Below, in pieces: positions 1 through 43,643 of a DNA stretch of 64,000 bases. The number at the start of each line of letters is the position of its first letter. Position 1 is the stretch's first letter. The DNA lies in IMG/VR virus record IMGVR_UViG_3300033145_003233, positions 248,001 through 312,000 of that record; one strand, given 5' to 3'. Below the pieces are notes generated by a model. The model saw only the letters and a program-made list of their open reading frames with translations, was not told where the DNA came from and made no database searches. Made by a program: the position numbers and the translations under genes.

Positions 1-864
1 ACACATATCTCCAGCTATAATATGAAAATCTCCTTTTCCTGCATTGACTTTAATAGCATCGCATACACTTCTGAATTGGGAATAGCTATTTCTCATATCT
101 GCTGTAACTATAAAATGCCAAGGTAGAAAATTAGGTTCTGTCTCAGATGATTTAGATTTAACTGGTTCGGGAATATGAGCCAACCAATGTTGAGAGAACA
201 TGGTGAAATCTACTATATCTACCGAACCATCTTTATTAAAATCATAAGGCATATCTTCATATCCAAGAGGATGGACCGTAATTTTTATATTACTTATATC
301 CTGCTTCGATGGACCTATTGCAGGATTATCTGTTGCAGTTAATACCATCTCATGAAGACCCACTTGCTCCATTGTGGGGTTCCATATAAATAGTTTAGGG
401 TCATATTGAGAACCTTCAAAAGTAGCTCCTGAAGGAAGATCACTTGTTGTTAATTCAACATTATCTCCATCTGGATCTGTAGCAGTAAATAAATATTCAA
501 ATTCAGTTTTGACAGGAATTGCAAATTGAGTATTAGAAACAATTATCCCTACAGTTTTAAAAATAGCGGCTGAAGTAAAAGTTATTCTATAATGGCCGGC
601 CTGAACATCCGTAGGAGTCCATTGAAATAAGGTTCCATCAAATACGCTTCCTTCCGGCAGGTTCCTTGCATAGACAAGAGAATTACTATCTGAGACAATA
701 GTAATAGACAAAGATTCTCCCTCATCTACTTTTTTAAAATCTACTATCTCTTGAGATCCCCCCTCTACATCAGAAATAGAGATTGCAGAATAAGAGATAG
801 AAGAGAAGGCGAGAATTATTAATGCCAAAAATATTTTACTGTTTCTACAAATTGTTTCCACCAT
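1..864 (-). CDS. Secreted protein with Ig-like repeats, a dockerin-like domain and the start of a metallophosphoesterase domain (truncated by window edge; not in ORF track)
   Basis: Manual translation from ATG at 864: MVETICRNSKIFLALIILAFSSISYSAIS (signal peptide), ATDPDGDNVELTTSDLPSGATF...FIWNPT (Ig-like), DFNKDGSVDIVDFTMFSQHWL (dockerin-like), WHFIVTADMR...FHIIAGDMC (calcineurin-like phosphoesterase motifs I/II). Confidence 0.75.
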   Translation of the reverse strand, partial: MVETICRNSKIFLALIILAFSSISYSAISISDVEGGSQEIVDFKKVDEGESLSITIVSDSNSLVYARNLPEGSVFDGTLFQWTPTDVQAGHYRITFTSAAIFKTVGIIVSNTQFAIPVKTEFEYLFTATDPDGDNVELTTSDLPSGATFEGSQYDPKLFIWNPTMEQVGLHEMVLTATDNPAIGPSKQDISNIKITVHPLGYEDMPYDFNKDGSVDIVDFTMFSQHWLAHIPEPVKSKSSETEPNFLPWHFIVTADMRNSYSQFRSVCDAIKVNAGKGDFHIIAGDMC

Positions 865-1034
865 TCTTTTAGTTCCTTTTTTTTCTTTTTTGAAAATGAA
901 CCATCAGGGACCACTTTAGTTGGAAGTAATCCAGCATTCCTCAGTTCTATTATGGCCTGTCTCGAGGAAAGAGTTTCAATAGTCCCGCTGACATCTTCCC
1001 CATCTTCATTAAGAGCTTCGTAATAATATCTCAC
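819..1034 (-). CDS. Stand-alone PilC/GspF N-terminal-like protein
   Basis: YYYEALNEDGEDVSGTIETLSSRQAIIELRNAGLLPTKV resembles the N-terminus of type II secretion F/PilC proteins; GTG start at 1034 follows GAGGT (ORF track starts at 1052). Confidence 0.6.
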   Translation of the reverse strand: MRYYYEALNEDGEDVSGTIETLSSRQAIIELRNAGLLPTKVVPDGSFSKKKKKELKEWWKQFVETVKYFWH

Positions 1035-1042
1035 ATAATACC

Positions 1043-1318
1043 TCAGGCACATGATAATTCTTTTTCTACATTTTTTAATGTCTTCTGAAGATCTTTAATT
1101 TCTTTTTTTAATTCTTTTTTTCTTGCTCTTAATCTAAATTTATGTTGTATTTCTTTAGTCTCTAATCTAAATAAAACACTTTCTAAATTATATACATATC
1201 TAGAACGACAGGAATAATATGCTAATTGATAACCTGATTTATTCTCTGCCCCATCAACAATACACTCCCACTCAGAATGACCCTTCCATAATATATATAG
1301 AACGATATATTCTCTCAT
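1043..1318 (-). CDS. Hypothetical protein
   Basis: ORF track; overlapping start/stop with neighbours. Confidence 0.5.
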   Translation of the reverse strand: MREYIVLYILWKGHSEWECIVDGAENKSGYQLAYYSCRSRYVYNLESVLFRLETKEIQHKFRLRARKKELKKEIKDLQKTLKNVEKELSCA

Positions 1319-1509
1319 GTCAGAGATATTGGCCAGGAATCTCCCGCATTATTATCCCACCTAGCGTATTGATATATAATTCCTTTTACCGTAGAATGGG
1401 TCTTAGGGAAATGGGCTATAAATAAACCATCATTAGATTTGATTTTATAAGATCTTTTTAGATCTGGTAGCTTTATTTCTAATTGTGTAGTATATGTATA
1501 GTTTCTCAT
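1315..1509 (-). CDS. Hypothetical protein
   Basis: ORF track; GGGGGG SD-like run and promoter directly upstream. Confidence 0.5.
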   Translation of the reverse strand: MRNYTYTTQLEIKLPDLKRSYKIKSNDGLFIAHFPKTHSTVKGIIYQYARWDNNAGDSWPISLT

Positions 1510-1518
1510 ATCCCCCCT

Positions 1519-1546
1519 ATTATATCACATAATTTTCACTTTTCAA
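1519..1546 (-). promoter_or_regulatory. Class 1 (sigma70-like) promoter with AAGTGAAA box
   Basis: TTGAAA-AGTGAAAATTATGTGA-TATAAT. Confidence 0.7.
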
Positions 1547-1551
1547 GTATA

Positions 1552-2637
1552 TTAAAACCACTTTTTGTAGATATTAGCATAAGTCCCATTCTCATAAAGA
1601 GTTAGAATAATCTTATCTATAGGACGTTTTAATTCACTTCCCTTAGATAGAACAAATCCATAGTATTGTTCATCAAACATACCGCCCGCCATAACAACCT
1701 TATCGGGATTGTCTTTTACATAGTTTAAGAGGATAGGATAGTCATAGACAACAGCATCTCCTCTTTCAAGCAGCAGATTATCACAGGCACTACTAATACT
1801 ATCAACTGTTTTAACTTTTGCTCCTAATTCTTTCACATATCCAACACTTGTTGTCCCTTTTTGAGTTAAGACAATTTTGCCTTTTAAATCGTCAGGGCTT
1901 TGAATATCTCCAGCTATCTTTTCCGTTGTATAATCAGCAGACAAAAGAGCAGTAAAATTACAAAAAGCCATAATCCCGCAAAAGATAAGTGCTATTGTTA
2001 TTATTTTTGTTATCCATTTCTTGGGAGTATAATCTCCATATCCAACTGTTGAGCAGGTAACAACACAGAAATAGATAGCTTCAAAAATCCCTGGGATATA
2101 TTTATTATTAATACCCTCGTCTTTCCCTCTTTCGGCAATCCATATTATATGAGAGAAGAGAAGTATAAAGAATATAAAAATACCTATAGGTCTAGACAAG
2201 GCCTCATAAAGAATAGCTCCTCTTGCAATAAAGCCACTACTGGCTTGGTTTTTCAAGACCATAATACCCAAACCAGAGTTCATAGTGGGAACAGAGAAAT
2301 CTGCCCATTCCATTCTAGCAGAACGGATTGTAAGACCTGAGCAACCCACATCTGCATTGCCATTCTTGATATTAGTTTCTATTTCATCCCATGGAACAGC
2401 ATTAAATTTCCAACTTGCAATAAGCCCTTGGGAAACCAATTCTTTTCCTATGGCATTCCATAGTTCTATTTCAAAACCTGAAATTTCTTTGGGGCCATAT
2501 TCGTTATCAGTATTAACAATTACACAGGGGGGCATATCTGAAACATAAACTTGCAAAGGCTTAAAAAAATCGTCCTGTGCCGAAACTATTTGACAACCAA
2601 CAAATAAAACCAACAAAATTACCAACGTTTTCTTCAT
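1552..2637 (-). CDS. GluR0-type ligand-gated potassium channel (SBP family 3 domain split by a two-TM K+ pore)
   Basis: Signal peptide; S1 lobe with SGLTIRSAR; TM helix; pore TCSTVGYGD (K+ filter TVGYG); TM helix; S2 lobe with GTTS, YDYP, EQYYGF, GTYANIYKKWF. Confidence 0.9.
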   Translation of the reverse strand: MKKTLVILLVLFVGCQIVSAQDDFFKPLQVYVSDMPPCVIVNTDNEYGPKEISGFEIELWNAIGKELVSQGLIASWKFNAVPWDEIETNIKNGNADVGCSGLTIRSARMEWADFSVPTMNSGLGIMVLKNQASSGFIARGAILYEALSRPIGIFIFFILLFSHIIWIAERGKDEGINNKYIPGIFEAIYFCVVTCSTVGYGDYTPKKWITKIITIALIFCGIMAFCNFTALLSADYTTEKIAGDIQSPDDLKGKIVLTQKGTTSVGYVKELGAKVKTVDSISSACDNLLLERGDAVVYDYPILLNYVKDNPDKVVMAGGMFDEQYYGFVLSKGSELKRPIDKIILTLYENGTYANIYKKWF

Positions 2638-2728: not shown

Positions 2729-3394
2729 TTATTTCTTTGCCATCAACCTTGCAACTTCATCGTCAACAGCACTATCTCCATGAGTGCCGTACTTACTTTC
2801 CATGTCTTCGATACCACCGGAGGGAGCCATCTCTTCGAAAGCTTCCGCTTCGCACTCATCCGACTCCACAGCGTCTTTAAGCTTATTAAGCTCTGAGAAG
2901 CAATTGTCCGAATCAAGCCCTTGACTTGACTTCGCAAACTCTTTTCTTGCTTCTGCCATTTGCTTACGGACTGCCAGTTGAGTATGATCGCTCTCGGCCT
3001 GACTAACCTTGTTGTTTTTGTCTTGCCATTGGCTCTTCATTCTACCAAGCATCATCTCATCCTGAGAGATCATCTTCTTAAGGCTGTCCGCCCTTTGCTG
3101 GGCCTGCGTCTTATTGGTGATACACGTCCGAACATCATCTTCCTTGCCAGCTTCTGCTGCCTTCTTAGCAAGATTAGTCCATTTCTTGATATCGGCCATT
3201 TCGGTATCAAGTTGACGCTGATTCTTTTTAATTTGTGCCGAATACTTACCAATATTGGCTTGTATCTCAGACAACTTTTTCTTAGAATCCTCAATAGCAA
3301 ACTTGCCATCGCGGATCGGATCTTCCATCGACTTCGCAGCCTTATCCTTTTTCTCACGAGCGGTATTTTTTAACATCTTCCAAAAACTTGCCAT
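2729..3394 (-). CDS. pspA: PspA/IM30 (Vipp1, ESCRT-III-like) family protein
   Basis: 221-aa coiled coil with EDPIRD..FAIED, W...AKKA.EAG.ED and C-terminal VDDEVARL. Confidence 0.85.
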   Translation of the reverse strand: MASFWKMLKNTAREKKDKAAKSMEDPIRDGKFAIEDSKKKLSEIQANIGKYSAQIKKNQRQLDTEMADIKKWTNLAKKAAEAGKEDDVRTCITNKTQAQQRADSLKKMISQDEMMLGRMKSQWQDKNNKVSQAESDHTQLAVRKQMAEARKEFAKSSQGLDSDNCFSELNKLKDAVESDECEAEAFEEMAPSGGIEDMESKYGTHGDSAVDDEVARLMAKK

Positions 3395-5785: not shown

Positions 5786-6589
5786 TTGCTCCTTAATAAA
5801 GGTTTTTTACAATTTATTCATAATATAGAATATGTGGAAACAGTAATAAAAGAAAAAATCATTAATATCTATAAAAACAATTTCAACAAAACAATTGTAG
5901 ATATTGCTTCTCAATTTAAAGTTAGCCGTAATACTATTTATAGAGCATTGGAAAAAAATAGAATAGATAAAAATCTGTTAAAATTTGACCATAATTTTTT
6001 CTCTTCCATTAATTCCGAAAAAAGCGCCTACTGGCTCGGTTTTATATTCGCAGATGGGTGCATATGTGATTCACACGGAACTACAAAATCCCTAAATATC
6101 CATTTATCTACTAAAGACGAATTACATCTTAAAGCATTTCAAAAAGATATTAAATCCAGATTAAAAATACATCTTGTAAAAGAAAAAGACAAAAACTCGG
6201 TTTATTGCAGATATTATTCTAATAAATTATGCGAAGATCTTATAAGACTAGGCTGCGTGCCAAGAAAAAGCACTATTTTGAATTTTCCCGACATCCCACC
6301 GCTTCTGCATCGACATTTTATCAGAGGATATATAGATGGAGATGGATGTATTTGTCTAAGAAAAAATGGCCTAAGAAAAAATTTACAGATAGGAATTATA
6401 GGAACTGAGCAGTTTTTATCTTCTCTACAATCTTTATTTTTCAAAGAGCTAAATATTAATCACAAAAAACTTCAGAATAAGGGCAGAGTTAAAAGTTTAA
6501 CCATTAATGGTAACAAGCAATGCCTCCGATTAATAAAATGGCTATATCAAGATAGCACAATATATCTTGCTAGGAAGTGCATAATATAA
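5786..6589 (+). mobile_element. Free-standing LAGLIDADG homing endonuclease with N-terminal HTH
   Basis: AYWLGFIFADGCI and RHFIRGYIDGDGCI motifs; opposite strand to its neighbours; real start may be GTG at 5834. Confidence 0.9.
5800..5824 (+). promoter_or_regulatory. Class 2 (sigmaH-like) promoter
   Basis: AGGT-N17-TAAT upstream of the LAGLIDADG coding region. Confidence 0.5.
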
Positions 6590-7182: not shown

Positions 7183-8489
7183 CTGTCCATTTCTTCCAAT
7201 AACTTTTTATAACGATTTCTATAGTTAGCACTCAAGTGATCTATCTTTTCAGATAACATTATCTCAAATAATTCATCTGGATCAAAATTAGCTAACTTGG
7301 CAAGACCAAGAATCAAGAGAGGAGTAGGAGTGTAGCTCCCTCCTTCGCTTCTTGCCACATTAGAAACACTCACATTTACCTCCTTACATAAAGATAGCTG
7401 ACTTTTCCCTATTGAGGTTCTTTTATTTTTTATATAAGCAGACGTTTTTTTAAAATTCCATCCTATTCCCTTAGAAGTTCCCTCATCAAAACGGAAGGCC
7501 CACCCTCTATTATCTTTCAATTCTCCCTTTTTATATTTATCAAATACTATTCTATGTTTATAATCATACCATCTTACCCTATCAGATAAAACCATCTCAT
7601 AAATAGGCTCTAAATTTAAAAATAAAGAATTACATAATCTATATATCATCATTTGGCCAGGCAGATTCCATGAAAGACAGATACTCCTTATAAGATGAGG
7701 ATGAACTCCTATCAACTTTGACTGCTCTCCGTATGTTAATCCTCGAATTGCTTCTAAGTAAAATACAGAAAAATCAGATTGAAATTCTTCATCCCTCAAT
7801 AATACTGTGTGAGGACAAGAAACATTATCTCTATGATAAGATTTAATTAATTTTATAACTTCATCTTTATCATCTTGCTTCTCCCTGTAATACTCCATAT
7901 ATTCAGCCACTTTTTTTTCTGCATGAGCCACATAGCATTTTATCTTCTCTAATAATTGCATATGAAAGAGATCATATGGGTTAATCTTCAAACATTTAGA
8001 TATAGCAAAAATCTTCTTTAAAGGTAAACTTTTTCTACCAGCTTCTATAGATAAAAGTTCCCTCCTCTCCATCCCCATTATCTTGAGAAAATTTATTATA
8101 GTCAGAGATTGCTCAACTCTCCTATTATGTATATATCTCCCAGTTTTTTTTAATTTTAATGAAACTTTACCTCGAGAATTAGAAGTAGAAAAAAAGATAC
8201 AATTATAAGGGTTCTTGCTAAAATCTCCCTTCTTTTTATAATCCTTATAAAAAAGAACATTCTCTTTAGCAAATCTTTTAGACCATTCTATTATAATAGA
8301 TTGGCAAAAAGATGGCGGATCAATACCCATAGCTTGTGCTATGTGAAAAGCCTTATGAATAGAAGGGATGATCTCTCCTTTTTCTGTCCTCAATATAACA
8401 TCAGGATGAACTCCAGATATCTTAAAAAGATCTTTAAGTGTCCATCCCTTAGAGATTCTTTGAGAACGTACTAGTTCGGCTACATTCAT
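7179..8489 (-). CDS. Transcriptional regulator with multiple XRE-type HTH repeats
   Basis: Repeated XRE-like segments (VRSQRISKGWTLKDL..., IHNRRVEQSLT..., IKNKRTSIGKSQLSL...E.G). Confidence 0.7.
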   Translation of the reverse strand: MNVAELVRSQRISKGWTLKDLFKISGVHPDVILRTEKGEIIPSIHKAFHIAQAMGIDPPSFCQSIIIEWSKRFAKENVLFYKDYKKKGDFSKNPYNCIFFSTSNSRGKVSLKLKKTGRYIHNRRVEQSLTIINFLKIMGMERRELLSIEAGRKSLPLKKIFAISKCLKINPYDLFHMQLLEKIKCYVAHAEKKVAEYMEYYREKQDDKDEVIKLIKSYHRDNVSCPHTVLLRDEEFQSDFSVFYLEAIRGLTYGEQSKLIGVHPHLIRSICLSWNLPGQMMIYRLCNSLFLNLEPIYEMVLSDRVRWYDYKHRIVFDKYKKGELKDNRGWAFRFDEGTSKGIGWNFKKTSAYIKNKRTSIGKSQLSLCKEVNVSVSNVARSEGGSYTPTPLLILGLAKLANFDPDELFEIMLSEKIDHLSANYRNRYKKLLEEMDR

Positions 8490-9085
8490 CTGCTAACAAA
8501 ATCCTCAACAACATATCCATTTTCATCTACATAGTTTTTAATTCTTCCCGCCATGTTATTAATAATTTGTCTAATTCTCTCTCTACTATAATCCAATACA
8601 TCTGCTATTTCAACCATTTCCATTCGTTGCTCATAATAATAATATTTGATTTGCTCTTCTAATGGGCTTAATTCAATTCTGTCAAACAAAAACTCTAAAT
8701 CTCCCCACTCAACAAATGGCTTATATTTCTCTCGTATAGGGCGATAATGGTATCCATATTCTTCTTCGCTTTCTCCAGCAAATTCAAAACCCATTATTTT
8801 AAATCTATCTTCCCACCTACTACGTAAATCTATATAGATAGAGAACCCTGTTCTAAAAGCAAATTTTGCATAGGTAGAAAATTTCACACCCCTAGACGGA
8901 TCATATTTCTCAGCGGCCATACACAAAAACCATATTAAATGACCAGCAACATCATCAATTTCGGGAGGCCTTATTTTTCCGCGATTTAATAACGTTTTTA
9001 TATACCACCATACCAAATTGATATTATCAGCAGCTAGTTGTTTTTGTTCTTCCGTTAAATAATGTTGTCCATAGGGTCTTCCCAT
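8486..9085 (-). CDS. Sigma-70 family RNA polymerase sigma factor
   Basis: DNINLV, KYDPSRGVKFSTYA (region 2); EIADVLDYSRERIRQI (region 4). Confidence 0.85.
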   Translation of the reverse strand: MGRPYGQHYLTEEQKQLAADNINLVWWYIKTLLNRGKIRPPEIDDVAGHLIWFLCMAAEKYDPSRGVKFSTYAKFAFRTGFSIYIDLRSRWEDRFKIMGFEFAGESEEEYGYHYRPIREKYKPFVEWGDLEFLFDRIELSPLEEQIKYYYYEQRMEMVEIADVLDYSRERIRQIINNMAGRIKNYVDENGYVVEDFVSR

Positions 9086-9091
9086 TTCATC

Positions 9092-9664
9092 CTAATCTCT
9101 TATATAAAAATCATTTTTCAATAAACTCCGCGACCTTATAATCCTTCTTAGCTTATTCAGCATCTCCATTATAATTTGCTGAATTCTTCTCCCACTAAGA
9201 TCATATTTCTTTCCCAGTTTTTCCTGAGAAATCTTATGAGAATAATATTCTATCAATATCTTTTTATCTCTTTCTTTAGCATTTATGCCATCAAGAAGTT
9301 CATATAGAAAATCTTTTTTAACCTCTGTTTTTTTAGCATCCTGAACAACACTTTCCTCAAGATAACGAATGTGGGATGAAGAACAAAAATTATATCTATC
9401 AAATTTTTCTTTCTCTTTCCCATAAATTTGTGCTATGCTTTTATTAAACCCCCAATAAGCATAAGTAGAGAACTTAGTTCCATAATCTTCATCATATTTC
9501 GAGGCAGATATACAAAAATTCAAACAAAGATCACTAATTAAATCATCCTTCAAATGAGGAAATATAAATTCTTTTTTCCTCAAATCCGAAATAAAACCTG
9601 TTAACAATCTAATATTATTAGTTACTAATTTCTGTTGTTTTTTTGTTAATCTCGTTCTGCTCAT
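9092..9664 (-). CDS. Sigma-70 family RNA polymerase sigma factor (paralog)
   Basis: KYDEDYGTKFSTYA; SQEKLGKKYDLSGRRIQQI. Confidence 0.8.
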   Translation of the reverse strand: MSRTRLTKKQQKLVTNNIRLLTGFISDLRKKEFIFPHLKDDLISDLCLNFCISASKYDEDYGTKFSTYAYWGFNKSIAQIYGKEKEKFDRYNFCSSSHIRYLEESVVQDAKKTEVKKDFLYELLDGINAKERDKKILIEYYSHKISQEKLGKKYDLSGRRIQQIIMEMLNKLRRIIRSRSLLKNDFYIRD

Positions 9665-32404: not shown

Positions 32405-33547
32405 CTATTCTTCTTGAAAATCAATCGATTTAGAAATAGTAAAATATACATAGGACCCCTTATCTTTTTCTGAATCTATCCATATCTTACCCCCATGGGC
32501 TTCTACTATCCTTTTACAAAGTGCTAACCCTATCCCTGTACCAGGATATTCTTCCCTAGAATATAATCTTTTAAAGATACCGAATACCCTGTCCATATAT
32601 TTAGAATCTATCCCTAAGCCATTATCTTTAACATAAAACAGCCAGCACGAATCTTCATCACAACAACCTATCCTGATAAAAGGAGATTCCTTGGACCTAA
32701 ATTTTAATGCATTACTAATTAAATTATGTAATAATTGTTTAATTCTAAAACGAATACCAAGGATGTGTGGCAAATCACCCTCCACAATAATTTTTGCACT
32801 GGACTCCCGAATCTTCACCTCAAAATCCATCATTGTTTCTTCTAACAAGTCATTTAAATTGATGGTCTCAAATGGCTTATCCCTTCTCCCTACTCGTGAA
32901 AAATCAAGTAGCTCTTCTATAAGTGTCTTCATTCTTATAGTGGCATCAATAATATAAAGAAAATACTTTTCAGCATCTTGATCTTCATCATATAAAGACT
33001 CACCTTTTTTCCTTTTCTCTGTAAGCAACTGACAATAACTAGAGACCACTCTTAATGGCTCCTGTAAATCATGAGAAGCGACATACGCAAATTCTTCAAG
33101 TTCCTGATTGCTTTGTCGCAAGGCATCTGCCGTTTCTTCCAATGTTCTACCATCCCTTATCCTTTCAGTAGCGTCCTGTTGAAAACCTACAAACCCTATT
33201 GTTTCGTCCTTATCGTTTTTTAACGGAGAAACAGTGAGGTCCATTAAAAAAATATCTCCATTTTTACGTTTATTTTTTAATAACCCCTTCCACGTTCCCC
33301 CATTATTAATTACCCTGGAGATACCATGTTGTATCTCATCTTTATTTACCTCCGCATTTAATATGCCAGGATGTTCCCCTAGTAATTCTTTTCTATCAAA
33401 ACCATATAAATTTTCCGATGCCTTATTGATGTATACTATACTTTGGTCTAAATTTGTAACAATAACAGATTCATGCATCTGCTCCATGACTGCCTTAAAA
33501 AACCATATTTCCTTATAAAAATTTTTATTTATAATATTCTTGTTCAT
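32405..33547 (-). CDS. PAS-domain sensor histidine kinase (Cph1-like HisKA-HATPase)
   Basis: PAS/PAC; FAYVASHDLQEPLR; NLISNALKF; DNGLG; GTGIGLA. Confidence 0.95.
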   Translation of the reverse strand: MNKNIINKNFYKEIWFFKAVMEQMHESVIVTNLDQSIVYINKASENLYGFDRKELLGEHPGILNAEVNKDEIQHGISRVINNGGTWKGLLKNKRKNGDIFLMDLTVSPLKNDKDETIGFVGFQQDATERIRDGRTLEETADALRQSNQELEEFAYVASHDLQEPLRVVSSYCQLLTEKRKKGESLYDEDQDAEKYFLYIIDATIRMKTLIEELLDFSRVGRRDKPFETINLNDLLEETMMDFEVKIRESSAKIIVEGDLPHILGIRFRIKQLLHNLISNALKFRSKESPFIRIGCCDEDSCWLFYVKDNGLGIDSKYMDRVFGIFKRLYSREEYPGTGIGLALCKRIVEAHGGKIWIDSEKDKGSYVYFTISKSIDFQEE

Positions 33548-41117: not shown

Positions 41118-43643
41118 TTATACCTCCGCCACAATCAAAGATAAAACAGCAGTATCTTCTATCATGTCAAAAACTTCTTTCCTAAGTTTTTCTTTATTAT
41201 CTGGATTCCATATAATCCTAACTTGAGTACCCTTGATATCATCTACTTTTCCATATTCTTGAGGATTAGCCATCCCCTTCCTTCTGTCTCTTACCCTCAT
41301 ACCTACTTGATATTGAGGAAGAGCTTCTTTCGGACCTTTCACAATTTCTGTTTTATCTTGATATAACTTATCAATAGCCTCCGGTAAAACTTGTGACAAT
41401 TTTACTTGCTTAAACCAATTCCCTGACATTAGCGGCTCCCTATATTTATTAATTATTTCTGGGGCCATCGCATGGACGGCCTGAGTAGCTTGAACTTTAG
41501 AATTCTCAAAAACATTTTGTTTCTCATTCCCGTCTGGCATAGTAGCAAAACTCATATCAATCTTGCCAGTATCTTGAAGCTCTTTAAGTCTATTTAATAC
41601 TTCTTTTATATAACCAGTAGAAGGACTTAAAACAGGAGTAAGAGTAGAAAATATATTTATTATATCACTTCCATTTATCACTGTTCCTCGAAATATCCCA
41701 GTTGGACTTTCTACAAAATTACTAAAATTTTCAAAGAATTTAGTATGTTTTTCTTCATTATAATTATCTGGTTGAGATGCCATATCATCAGCTTGAACAT
41801 GATACAAAACGTACTTCCATAAGTCTTTATGTTCTTCATCTTTACCATGCATTCTTGTATCTCTTAAAAATCTACCCCTACCTTTAGGCCCCCACTTATC
41901 AGCAGAATGAGGACGCATATGTAATCTTATAACCTGATTAACTATATCTCTCTCATCTCTACCAACACCAATAGATTTAAGGATCTGATTTGCCATCTTA
42001 GTAGATGCTCTCTCGTGATCTATATATTGCATCTGTTCCACATTCTTAGGATGAGGCTTCTGCACACCACCTTTCATCTTTCCAAAATCATGAAATAAAG
42101 CAGCAAGATTCATAAGGCCCCTCATATGATCACTTTCTCCATTATCTTGCATTATCTTATTCATATTTTTTACAACTTCTAAAGTATGATCTAATAAATT
42201 ATATTTATGATAAGGAGTTTGTTGATTCATCATTATACCTTCAGGATGCAAATCATCCATTTCAGGAACTTTAAATGCTGACTTATATAAACCAGTACTA
42301 AATAATAATTTAAGAGAATCAACTGGATTTCCCATTAACATCTTCATTAATTCTGGTCCAGCTCTTTCAGAAGCTACCTTCTTACTATATGATTCATGAA
42401 TAGAAGGATCTCCCATTGCCTTAACAATAGAATCATCAATTACGCTATTAGGAAAACGACTATGAAAACGCAAAACTCTCAAAAGCCTAAGAGGATCTTC
42501 ATGAAAAGTTTTATATGATTCATCTGGAGTTCTTAAAACTATTTGACCATCTCCCTCTATCCCCAAATCTTTTTTCCCGCCAACAAAATCATCTACCTCA
42601 CCTGTATCTATATTATAATAAAGAGCATTGATAGTTAAATCTCTTCTTCTAACATCTTCCTTGGGATTATTTGTAGTAGTAATTTGTGGTTGACGACTAT
42701 TGGGATCAGGATAATGCTCTGTTCTCATTGGAACAAATTCTATTTTTTGGCCGAATAAATCAACTGCTCCAACCATCAACTTATCATCAGGAGCTTTCTC
42801 TAATGGATCAGCAGATTTCTCCAAACTTACCTTATATGCTTTAGAAACATCAATTATATTATGCCTAACGGCTGCTTCAGCAACTAATTGAGCGAAATCA
42901 TAACCAGGCATATCAATAGCTATATCTATGTCATCACTAGGTATCCCCAATAACTTATCTCTCACCCATCCACCAGCTACTCTCATTTGAATATTAAGCC
43001 CGTGTCCTTTTTTAACTGTCTTTAAAAACTCAAATATGTTTTTCTCCTTAGGAGTAAGAGATAATTCAGAATGACCCCCGATTACTCTCTGCCCCTTTTT
43101 AAAAACCTTCTTCCCAGTAGTAGATAATCTAGAAGTAGGAAAAGAGAGACCAGGAACACTATTAGAAACCAAACACTCCACACCGATATCAAATTCTTCT
43201 ACTATATTTTTAACCGAGTCAAAAGATCCCATAGCAGCAGGCTCATTAACAATAATTCTTATAAGAGAATCAGATATATCTAACTCTTCTGCAAAGTTTA
43301 GTTGCAATCCCCCAAAGCGACTCTTTTCAGCCCCTGTTTTTTGAGAATCTAGTACTAAAAATATAGAATACTCTTTAAAATATTTATCAGCAAACCTCTG
43401 AGAAAACAGAGGAATAGGACTAAAAAAAGATATCTTATTCTTAATTAAAAAACCTCTTAAGTCTATAATATCACAAGGAAAAACCATATGTCTTGTAGGC
43501 AAGAAAGCAGCAAGGTCATCAATTAATCTGTCCGAACAATCAGCCACATAGGAAAATAATGACCTAAATCTTTGCAAACAGGATAAAATAACATCCTTAT
43601 CCACGTTTATTGGATCTCCTCTTATTTCTCGAACAACCCCCAC
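41118..43643 (-). CDS. cca: CCA tRNA nucleotidyltransferase with HD domain and N-/C-terminal extensions
   Basis: GGWVRD, DDIDIA, RRDLTINA, DPLRLLR, ERAGPEL, LFHDFGK. Confidence 0.9.
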   Translation of the reverse strand: MGVVREIRGDPINVDKDVILSCLQRFRSLFSYVADCSDRLIDDLAAFLPTRHMVFPCDIIDLRGFLIKNKISFFSPIPLFSQRFADKYFKEYSIFLVLDSQKTGAEKSRFGGLQLNFAEELDISDSLIRIIVNEPAAMGSFDSVKNIVEEFDIGVECLVSNSVPGLSFPTSRLSTTGKKVFKKGQRVIGGHSELSLTPKEKNIFEFLKTVKKGHGLNIQMRVAGGWVRDKLLGIPSDDIDIAIDMPGYDFAQLVAEAAVRHNIIDVSKAYKVSLEKSADPLEKAPDDKLMVGAVDLFGQKIEFVPMRTEHYPDPNSRQPQITTTNNPKEDVRRRDLTINALYYNIDTGEVDDFVGGKKDLGIEGDGQIVLRTPDESYKTFHEDPLRLLRVLRFHSRFPNSVIDDSIVKAMGDPSIHESYSKKVASERAGPELMKMLMGNPVDSLKLLFSTGLYKSAFKVPEMDDLHPEGIMMNQQTPYHKYNLLDHTLEVVKNMNKIMQDNGESDHMRGLMNLAALFHDFGKMKGGVQKPHPKNVEQMQYIDHERASTKMANQILKSIGVGRDERDIVNQVIRLHMRPHSADKWGPKGRGRFLRDTRMHGKDEEHKDLWKYVLYHVQADDMASQPDNYNEEKHTKFFENFSNFVESPTGIFRGTVINGSDIINIFSTLTPVLSPSTGYIKEVLNRLKELQDTGKIDMSFATMPDGNEKQNVFENSKVQATQAVHAMAPEIINKYREPLMSGNWFKQVKLSQVLPEAIDKLYQDKTEIVKGPKEALPQYQVGMRVRDRRKGMANPQEYGKVDDIKGTQVRIIWNPDNKEKLRKEVFDMIEDTAVLSLIVAEV

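What the first reader, a model, noticed from the sequence alone, without database searches (positions are those of the whole stretch)
819..1052. Stand-alone mimic of the PilC/GspF cytoplasmic N-terminus
Seen: a ~70-aa ORF (GTG at 1034) reads MRYYYEALNEDGEDVSGTIETLSSRQAIIELRNAGLLPTKV followed by a Lys run and an amphipathic WWKQF helix. It lacks the T2SSF domains and TM segments. Known: PilC/GspF N-terminal regions engage the assembly ATPases, and several Pseudomonas phages block type IV pili to exclude superinfection. Inference: a dominant-negative decoy that shuts off pilus assembly, suggesting the pilus is this phage's receptor.
Basis: partly seen in the sequence, partly recalled or inferred. 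Interest (0 to 1): 0.6.

Follow-up and report, generated by a model that had tools for sequence, protein, structure and literature searches.

The report
Megaphage stand-alone PilC/GspF N-domain protein
A 548-kb phage carries a small, selectively maintained gene that copies only the first ~45 residues of the bacterial pilus/secretion platform protein PilC/GspF and joins them to a likely membrane-binding tail, so it probably docks at the host's type IV pilus machine, though its target and effect are untested.

Summary
Window 819..1034 (-) encodes a 71-aa protein in a 547,943-bp IMG/VR megaphage.

- **Homology.** Residues 1-45 are a true homologue of the extreme N-domain of PilC/GspF (Pfam 38.1 PF28597, T2SSF_N). 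Support comes from the precomputed Pfam hit, NCBIfam GspF positions 1-51 (E 9e-7), hhalign against T2SSF-bearing PilCs (99.4%, E 2e-21), and an AF2 beta-beta-alpha-beta model that superposes on a planctomycete PilC at 1.5 A.
- **Tail.** A Lys run and a strongly amphipathic C-terminal helix follow the domain.
- **Missing machine parts.** The phage has no T2SSF core, ATPase, prepilin peptidase or secretin. It does have two type IV pilin-like genes about 38 kb away.
- **Selection.** The gene is under purifying selection (dN/dS 0.06-0.09).
- **Relatives.** Other phage-like contigs carry the same domain with a TM helix or an amphipathic tail. One has a homologous pilin gene about 1 kb upstream.

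Published models place ATPase contacts on the Cyto1/Cyto2 domains, not on this N-domain. The N-domain's partner is unknown, and deleting it only weakens function.

My best reading is a membrane-tethered N-domain that occupies the platform N-domain's docking site and modulates, most likely attenuates, host pilus assembly. I rate it a new variant of phage interference with type IV pili. No binding or phenotype evidence exists.

The parts
819..1034 (-). CDS of the 71-aa stand-alone T2SSF_N protein (GTG start 1034, TAA stop 819-821). An alternative in-frame ATG at 1052 would add 6 residues.
   Evidence: purifying selection
900..1034 (-). T2SSF_N domain (residues 1-45), beta-beta-alpha-beta fold. 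It keeps the family's invariant or near-invariant residues Y5, E6, A7, G12, E20, A27, R32, G35, P38, T39 and K40.
876..890 (-). Lys run (residues 49-53), encoded by an A-rich tract. It is four residues longer in the relative L002.
822..875 (-). C-terminal amphipathic helix (residues 54-71), a putative in-plane membrane anchor. Its coding sequence overlaps the start of the next gene by 46 nt.
   Evidence: hydrophobic moment 0.66, reached by 22 of 2000 shuffles; helix 49-69 in the AF2 model; overlap
1041..1044 (-). GAGG Shine-Dalgarno 6 nt upstream of GTG 1034
1519..1546 (-). Sigma-70-like promoter (TTGAAA, 16 nt, TG-extended TATAAT; 11 of 12 matches) ahead of the four-gene leftward unit
   Evidence: consensus match only
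1043..1509 (-). Two upstream co-oriented, overlapping ORFs (64 aa at 1315..1509; 91 aa with a coiled-coil end at 1043..1318). They form a single 154-aa ORF in L002. Function unknown.
1..864 (-). Downstream co-oriented gene, which runs off the window: signal peptide, He_PIG Ig-like domain(s) and a dockerin-like segment. Its ATG at 864 lies inside the tail-coding region of the T2SSF_N gene.

Best explanation
The gene encodes a cytoplasmic, membrane-tethered copy of the N-domain of the type IV filament platform protein (PilC/GspF).

**Shown.** Residues 1-45 are a bona fide T2SSF_N domain that keeps the family's conserved surface and core residues. The rest of the platform protein is absent from the protein and from the whole phage. 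The gene is under purifying selection.

**Inferred.**
- The Lys run plus the amphipathic C-terminal helix hold the domain on the inner face of the cytoplasmic membrane. The platform's own N-domain is described as staying at that membrane surface in simulations of PulF, on a flexible basic linker.
- There the phage protein occupies whichever site of the host type IV pilus or type II secretion machine normally receives the platform's N-domain.
- Because the native N-domain boosts assembly without being essential, the expected effect is modulation. Most likely this means fewer or shorter-lived pili, with the balance shifted toward retraction.
- That would limit adsorption of pilus-dependent competitors, or of progeny, to infected cells.
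- It probably acts together with the phage's two pilin-like proteins.
For: - **Homology and fold:**
- **No other machine parts in the 548-kb genome:** no T2SSF, T2SSE, prepilin peptidase or secretin. Any activity must therefore go through host components.
- **Pilin-like genes:** two canonical prepilin-type genes (leader, then G|FT[LI][IV]E) lie in the same genome.
- **Linkage elsewhere:** in the phage-like contig L016 a homologous pilin (37% identity) lies about 1 kb upstream of, and on the same strand as, a stand-alone T2SSF_N gene.
- **Selection:** dN/dS is 0.06 to 0.09.
- **Recurrent architecture:** low-GC, phage-like contigs carry T2SSF_N followed by a TM helix (P0003, P0004, P0011, P0020) or an amphipathic tail (P0005).
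- **Tail:** its hydrophobic moment of 0.66 was reached by 22 of 2000 shuffles.
- **Literature on the native N-domain:** it is peripheral and kept at anionic membranes in simulations, its deletion lowers activity, and a pilG N-domain mutant is rescued by removing PilT (PMC10790770).
- **Precedent:** phage proteins that target or replace T4P parts (PMC13436744, PMC11656802, PMC12952977).
Against: - No partner of the native N-domain is known, so 'competition' has no defined target.
- Deleting the N-domain gives only a partial defect, so a decoy may have a weak effect.
- The phage N-domain is acidic (net -4), whereas the PulF N-domain is described as basic and lipid-binding.
- The host is unidentified, and whether it has pili is unknown.
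- The operon neighbours (two unknown ORFs and a secreted Ig/dockerin protein) have no established pilus link.
- Only one close homologue exists (L002).
- The low dN/dS of the tail is confounded by its overlap with the next gene.
- There is no binding or phenotype evidence of any kind.
Confidence: 0.45

Rival explanations
1. Co-option rather than blockade. The stand-alone N-domain acts in trans as an accessory that helps the host machine assemble the phage's own pilin-like proteins, or export phage exoproteins such as the secreted Ig/dockerin protein encoded next to it. The infected cell would then build a phage-specified filament or secretion route.
For: - The phage has two pilin-like genes but no assembly machinery.
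- A pilin gene and a T2SSF_N gene are adjacent in L016.
- The native N-domain enhances assembly.
- The next gene in the operon encodes a Sec-signal protein.
- There is a weak similarity between the pilins' C-terminal part and that protein's He_PIG domain (pairwise E 0.017).
Against: - There is no evidence that an N-domain can act in trans.
- The pilins lie 38 kb away in this genome.
- The Ig-domain similarity is marginal.
- The published precedent for phage pilins is defence by replacement (PMC12952977), not construction of a new filament.
Confidence: 0.2
2. The small beta-beta-alpha-beta module is used against a target outside type IV filament systems. Examples would be another membrane-associated host complex, or RNA polymerase in the manner of T7 Gp2 and YkzG. 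The kinship to PilC would then reflect only evolutionary origin.
For: - The best PDB fold matches are YkzG and T7 Gp2 (E 0.1-0.3, TM about 0.5). The PulF study found the same structural neighbours for the native N-domain.
- T2SSF_N is found fused to varied partners: HTH_17, unknown helical domains and TM helices. That suggests a portable binding module.
Against: - The fold matches are not significant, and the fold is very simple.
- The PulF study notes that the Arg used by Gp2 is absent from the N-domain.
- A membrane tether fits poorly with an RNA polymerase target.
- All family-conserved residues are retained, which argues that the ancestral interaction is kept.
Confidence: 0.12
3. It is a non-functional remnant of a captured pilC 5' end, or a gene-calling artefact like many database 'stand-alone' T2SSF_N entries.
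For: Many short T2SSF_N proteins in the databases are frameshifted or truncated pieces of real pilC genes.
Against: - No T2SSF sequence follows it or occurs anywhere in the phage.
- dN/dS is 0.06 to 0.09 at dS of about 0.9.
- It has its own SD.
- It has a distinct, conserved tail.
- The same design recurs in other phage-like contigs.
Confidence: 0.05

Closest known systems
N-domain of GspF/PilC platform proteins (Pfam PF28597 T2SSF_N; PulF residues 1-54)
   Same: It is homologous in sequence and has the same beta-beta-alpha-beta fold. Like planctomycete PilCs, it is followed by a basic linker. It is expected to sit at the cytoplasmic face of the membrane.
   Different: It is not attached to the Cyto1/TM/Cyto2 core and ends instead in an amphipathic helix. 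It is phage-encoded. The domain is acidic, whereas the PulF N-domain is basic.
Prophage-encoded FimU (P-FimU) of F10-like Pseudomonas phages (PMC12952977)
   Same: It is a phage-carried homologue of a host type IV pilus component that depends entirely on the host machine. The megaphage also carries pilin-like genes.
   Different: P-FimU is a full-length minor pilin that is built into the pilus tip and leaves function intact. Here only a 45-residue cytoplasmic domain of the platform protein is copied, and no incorporation or defence has been shown.
Small phage inhibitors of pilus assembly: Aqs1, Tip and Zip acting on PilB (PMC13436744, PMC11656802). From my own knowledge, not checked here: PfsE of Pf4 acting on PilC.
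   Same: They are small phage proteins presumed to act at the cytoplasmic base of the T4P machine. Superinfection exclusion is a plausible benefit.
   Different: There is no sequence relationship: tblastn against 50,697 deposited phage genomes found nothing. Those inhibitors are not homologues of machine parts. Aqs1 binds the PilB N2 domain, whereas this protein's target is unknown.
T7 Gp2 and YkzG (RNA polymerase epsilon), small beta-beta-alpha-beta proteins
   Same: They are the nearest solved folds, as also reported for the PulF N-domain.
   Different: The matches are not significant and there is no sequence similarity. The functional Arg of Gp2 is reported absent from the N-domain. The membrane tail argues for a different site of action.
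C-terminal amphipathic membrane-targeting helices of MinD/FtsA type (own knowledge, not tested here)
   Same: It has a basic stretch followed by a short, strongly amphipathic terminal helix.
   Different: There is no homology, and membrane binding of this tail is only inferred.

Membership tests
Pfam PF28597 T2SSF_N (domain family) | Significant profile match to the N-terminal about 45-50 residues of GspF/PilC | tested here: met
   Precomputed Pfam hit. The model is absent from the local Pfam copy, so it was tested independently: NCBIfam GspF positions 1-51, E 9.1e-7; hhalign 99.4%, E 2.3e-21 against T2SSF-bearing PilCs; M. xanthus PilC, E 1.4e-4.
Pfam PF28597 T2SSF_N (domain family) | Beta-beta-alpha-beta fold | tested here: met
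   The AF2 model has strands 2-8 and 14-20, a helix 24-33 and a strand 37-43, with pLDDT about 89. It superposes at 1.5 A over 54 residues on a planctomycete T2SSF protein model.
GspF/PilC platform proteins (full-length) | Two T2SSF (PF00482) cytoplasmic repeats | tested here: not met
   There is no PF00482 in the ORF or anywhere in the 547,943-bp phage.
GspF/PilC platform proteins (full-length) | Three transmembrane segments | tested here: not met
   The protein is 71 aa and its maximum Kyte-Doolittle 19-mer is -1.04.
Phage T4P inhibitors (Aqs1/Tip/Zip/PfsE) | Sequence kinship to a characterised inhibitor | tested here: not met
   tblastn of the ORF against INPHARED phage genomes at E <= 1 found no match. 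PHROGs gave no family.
Phage T4P inhibitors (Aqs1/Tip/Zip/PfsE) | Binds PilB or PilC and abolishes piliation | not testable with these tools
   One complex prediction with a planctomycete-type PilB returned 'no answer'. This is not evidence either way.
Phage-encoded replacements of T4P components (P-FimU type) | Homologue of a host T4P/T2SS component carried by a phage that lacks the machine | tested here: met
Phage-encoded replacements of T4P components (P-FimU type) | Takes the host component's place in the machine and blocks pilus-dependent phages | not testable with these tools
   This needs expression, localisation and adsorption assays.
Gp2/YkzG RNA-polymerase binders | Significant structural or sequence similarity, plus the conserved surface Arg on the sheet | tested here: inconclusive
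   Foldseek gives E 0.1-0.3 and TM about 0.5. The literature says the Arg is absent from the PulF N-domain. This was not examined residue by residue here.

The most novel reading that the evidence does not exclude
Huge phages carry a minimal kit for the host's type IV filament machine: a membrane-tethered platform N-domain plus phage pilins. With it they reprogram the machine rather than simply block it. They might cap or rebuild the filament with phage pilins, or redirect it to export phage exoproteins. On this reading the T2SSF_N module is a portable address tag that different phages fuse to different membrane anchors and effector domains.
Probability: 0.15. Interest if true: 0.75.

Novelty: new variant of a known kind. 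Interest (0 to 1): 0.5.

Why it matters
- **An open question becomes testable.** The partner and role of the PilC/GspF N-domain are unresolved in type IV pilus and type II secretion biology. The PulF study ends by saying its interacting partners must be identified. A natural, soluble-sized, stand-alone version kept by selection in phages is a ready-made bait and a trans-acting probe for that question.
- **A possible new route of interference.** It would add a new way for phages to interfere with type IV filaments: copying a fragment of the platform protein, rather than evolving an unrelated inhibitor or a full pilin.
- **A lead on megaphage biology.** It suggests that uncultivated megaphages, here possibly of Planctomycetota, manipulate host surface filaments.

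Tried and rejected
- **Single-sequence phmmer against PDB:** only chance hits.
- **Local Pfam and PHROGs:** no family, because PF28597 is newer than the local copy.
- **Literature search for 'T2SSF_N':** nothing.
- **The search for related loci with single proteins:**
  - The ORF itself found no relatives in IMG/VR, GTDB genomes or JGI metagenome contigs.
  - P0009 and the neighbouring channel gene found no relatives in IMG/VR.
  - P0011 gave 47 viral loci, but they all match its C-terminal domain (residues 52 onward), not T2SSF_N, so I dropped them.
- **tblastn against INPHARED phages:** no match.
- **Sequencing-run search:** none was listed.
- **Complex prediction of the ORF with a planctomycete-type PilB (L008):** verdict 'no answer'. 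I do not use it as evidence for or against binding.
- **Database 'stand-alone' T2SSF_N proteins on long contigs** (P0054, P0105, P0123, and also P0016): these are frameshifted or truncated pieces of real pilC genes. I rejected them as true stand-alone relatives.
- **HPr link:** an HPr gene lies near the T2SSF_N gene in L005 and L016, but the megaphage has none.
- **Alternative genetic code:** none was needed.

Full report
**What is there**

The window is bases 248,001-312,000 of a single 547,943-bp IMG/VR virus record rated complete. The record has 33.6% G+C and 29 tRNA genes.

On the minus strand, 819..1052 is an open frame of 77 codons from ATG 1052, or 71 codons from GTG 1034.
- GTG 1034 has a GAGG 6 nt upstream. 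28 of 44 long ORFs in the window have a comparable Shine-Dalgarno.
- The collection's own gene call also starts at the GTG (P0001).

It begins with an N-terminal segment starting RYYYEALNEDGEDVSGTIE. A five-Lys run follows (residues 49-53), and then a Trp/Phe-rich helix runs to the C-terminus. It has no T2SSF domain and no hydrophobic segment.

**Is the PilC/GspF resemblance real?**

Yes. Four independent lines support it.
1. The collection's precomputed Pfam 38.1 annotation is PF28597, named T2SSF_N. That model is missing from the local Pfam copy, which explains the blank and the error.
2. NCBIfam's full-length GspF model TIGR02120 aligns its positions 1-51 to residues 3-53, with E 9.1e-7.
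3. An exhaustive phmmer search of 1.84 billion representatives found 20 proteins at E <= 1e-3, and the match in each covers the N-domain region of the query.
   - Three of them carry a Pfam T2SSF domain further on: P0016 and P0019 (using the precomputed labels) and P0021.
   - A profile of the hits finds Myxococcus xanthus PilC residues 18-61 in the PDB, E 1.4e-4.
   - hhalign of the stand-alone set against 22 T2SSF-bearing PilC fragments gives 99.4% probability and E 2.3e-21, aligning to PilC residues 2-48.
4. The AF2 model has strands 2-8 and 14-20, a helix 24-33 and a strand 37-43 (pLDDT about 89), then a helix 49-69.
   - This is the beta-beta-alpha-beta fold described for the PulF N-domain (PMC10790770).
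   - It superposes on a 432-aa planctomycete T2SSF protein model over 54 residues at 1.5 A.
   - Its best PDB neighbours, YkzG and T7 Gp2 (not significant), are the same two that the PulF authors found for the native domain.

**Is it a functioning gene or a fragment?**

Many short T2SSF_N entries in the databases are artefacts. On long contigs they are followed directly by T2SSF pieces of the same broken pilC gene. That is not the case here.
- The next gene encodes a signal-peptide, He_PIG Ig-like, dockerin-like protein.
- The whole phage contains no T2SSF sequence.
- A 1,288-bp JGI contig (L002) is syntenic at 79% nucleotide identity and carries the same gene.
- Against L002, dN/dS is 0.06 for the whole ORF and 0.09 for the N-domain alone, with dS near 0.9.
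- The tail is equally conserved, but its coding sequence overlaps the start of the next gene by 46 nt (ATG 864, conserved in L002). Its conservation is therefore confounded.
- The Lys run differs in length by four residues between the two phages.

**Anatomy and setting**

The tail has a hydrophobic moment of 0.66, reached by 22 of 2000 shuffles. Its net charge is +5, whereas the N-domain is -4.

The gene is third in a tightly packed leftward unit.
- A near-consensus sigma-70-type promoter lies at 1546-1519 (11 of 12 matches, extended -10; a consensus match only).
- A 64-aa ORF and a 91-aa ORF follow. They form one 154-aa ORF in L002.
- The T2SSF_N gene comes next, and then the secreted Ig/dockerin protein.
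- Further upstream lie a GluR0-like ligand-gated K+ channel and a PspA/IM30 homologue.

**The rest of the phage genome**

The phage lacks T2SSE ATPases, prepilin peptidase and secretin. It has no second T2SSF_N copy.

It does have two tandem genes with a canonical prepilin-type N-terminus: a short basic leader, then G|FT[LI][IV]E. Both are over the Pfam N_methyl cut-off, and the 153-aa one (L010 1147..1608) is also over the TIGR02532 cut-off. They lie about 38 kb before the window.

**Relatives**

The closest true relatives are short proteins on low-GC contigs packed with small unannotated genes. Several of these contigs share other genes with this megaphage.

Their design recurs.
- One or two T2SSF_N modules are followed by a TM helix in P0003, P0004, P0011 and P0020.
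- An amphipathic terminal helix follows in P0005.
- An HTH_17 domain comes in front in P0004.

In L016, a pilin-like gene that is 37% identical to the megaphage's pilins lies about 1 kb upstream of the T2SSF_N gene on the same strand.

Among cellular proteins, the nearest N-domains are labelled Planctomycetota PilC. They are followed by a Lys/Gly-rich linker. One example sits in a PilB-PilT-PilC-pilin cluster (L008).

**How it most likely works**

*Shown:* a selectively maintained, stand-alone T2SSF_N domain in a phage that carries no other part of the assembly machine (no platform core, ATPase, prepilin peptidase or secretin), only two pilin-like genes.

*Inferred:*
- The Lys run and amphipathic helix place the domain on the inner face of the membrane. 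The platform's own N-domain also stays at that membrane surface on a flexible basic linker in simulations.
- The retained family residues (Y5, E6, A7, G12, E20, A27, R32, G35, P38, T39, K40) suggest that the ancestral contact is kept.
- The protein would therefore occupy the site that receives the platform's N-domain.

The literature limits what follows from this.
- ATPase contacts are modelled through Cyto1/Cyto2, not through the N-domain.
- Deleting PulF residues 2-54 lowers but does not abolish secretion and piliation.
- The domain is also dispensable in P. aeruginosa PilC and in N. meningitidis PilG.
- A pilG N-domain mutant is rescued by removing PilT.

I therefore expect attenuation or re-tuning of pilus dynamics rather than a shut-off, and I put this reading at 0.45. 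The rivals are:
- co-option of the machine for the phage's own pilins or exoproteins (0.2);
- a target outside type IV filament systems (0.12);
- a dead remnant (0.05).

**Comparison with what is known**

The protein is a member of the T2SSF_N domain family. It is not a platform protein, because both defining features (T2SSF repeats and TM segments) were tested and not met.

In concept it is closest to two groups.
- Phage-carried copies of pilus parts: prophage FimU, PMC12952977.
- Small phage inhibitors acting at the pilus base: Aqs1/Tip/Zip, PMC13436744 and PMC11656802.

It has no sequence kin among 50,697 deposited phage genomes, and it differs from both groups in copying only a 45-residue cytoplasmic domain. 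I found no paper describing such a protein.

**Limits**

- There is no binding, localisation or phenotype evidence.
- The one complex prediction gave no verdict.
- The host is unknown.
- Only one close homologue exists.
- No sequencing run was listed, so expression could not be checked.

Noticed in passing
L010:699-1157(-) and L010:1147-1608(-) (G000:C1 about 209.9-210.8 kb, roughly 38 kb before the window): Two tandem type IV pilin-like genes (152 and 153 aa) with a short basic leader and G|FT[LI][IV]E. Their C-terminal parts carry a 'WTPQETGLSKM' motif reminiscent of He_PIG Ig domains. The only relatives are one Logan contig (73% identity) and the L016 pilin (37% identity). An FkbM-type methyltransferase gene lies next to them.
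   Followed up: partly
window 1043-1509 (-): The two ORFs upstream of the finding (64 aa and 91 aa, overlapping by ATGA) correspond to one continuous 154-aa ORF in the related contig L002. This means either a frameshift or assembly error here, or a genuine split.
   Followed up: partly
window 1-864 (-): A secreted protein (signal peptide, He_PIG Ig-like domains, dockerin-like segment) whose start codon lies 46 nt inside the T2SSF_N gene. It shows a weak similarity (pairwise E 0.017) to the C-terminal part of the phage pilins.
   Followed up: partly
window 1552-2637 (-) and 2729-3394 (-): A phage-encoded GluR0-like channel (SBP_bac_3 ligand-binding domain split by an Ion_trans_2 pore) and a PspA/IM30 homologue sit next to the operon. 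This forms a cluster of genes acting on the host inner membrane.
   Followed up: no
window 8486-9664 (-), 32405-33547 (-), 41118-43643 (-): Two adjacent sigma-70-family factors, a PAS histidine kinase, and a CCA-adding/poly(A) polymerase-HD protein. The window also has ThyX, dCMP deaminase, a DNA methylase, a papain-like protease, a NUDIX protein and a LAGLIDADG endonuclease on the opposite strand (5786-6589).
   Followed up: no
L016:519-794 and L005:1373-1651: PTS HPr-like genes lie within about 2 kb of the stand-alone T2SSF_N genes in two phage-like contigs. The megaphage itself has no HPr.
   Followed up: partly
P0003, P0004, P0005, P0015: Some relatives carry two tandem T2SSF_N modules. 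P0004 adds an N-terminal excisionase-type HTH_17 and a C-terminal TM helix, which suggests the module is shuffled among phage proteins.
   Followed up: partly
G000:C1 171.6-183.6 kb: A dense array of 27 of the phage's 29 tRNA genes on one strand.
   Followed up: no
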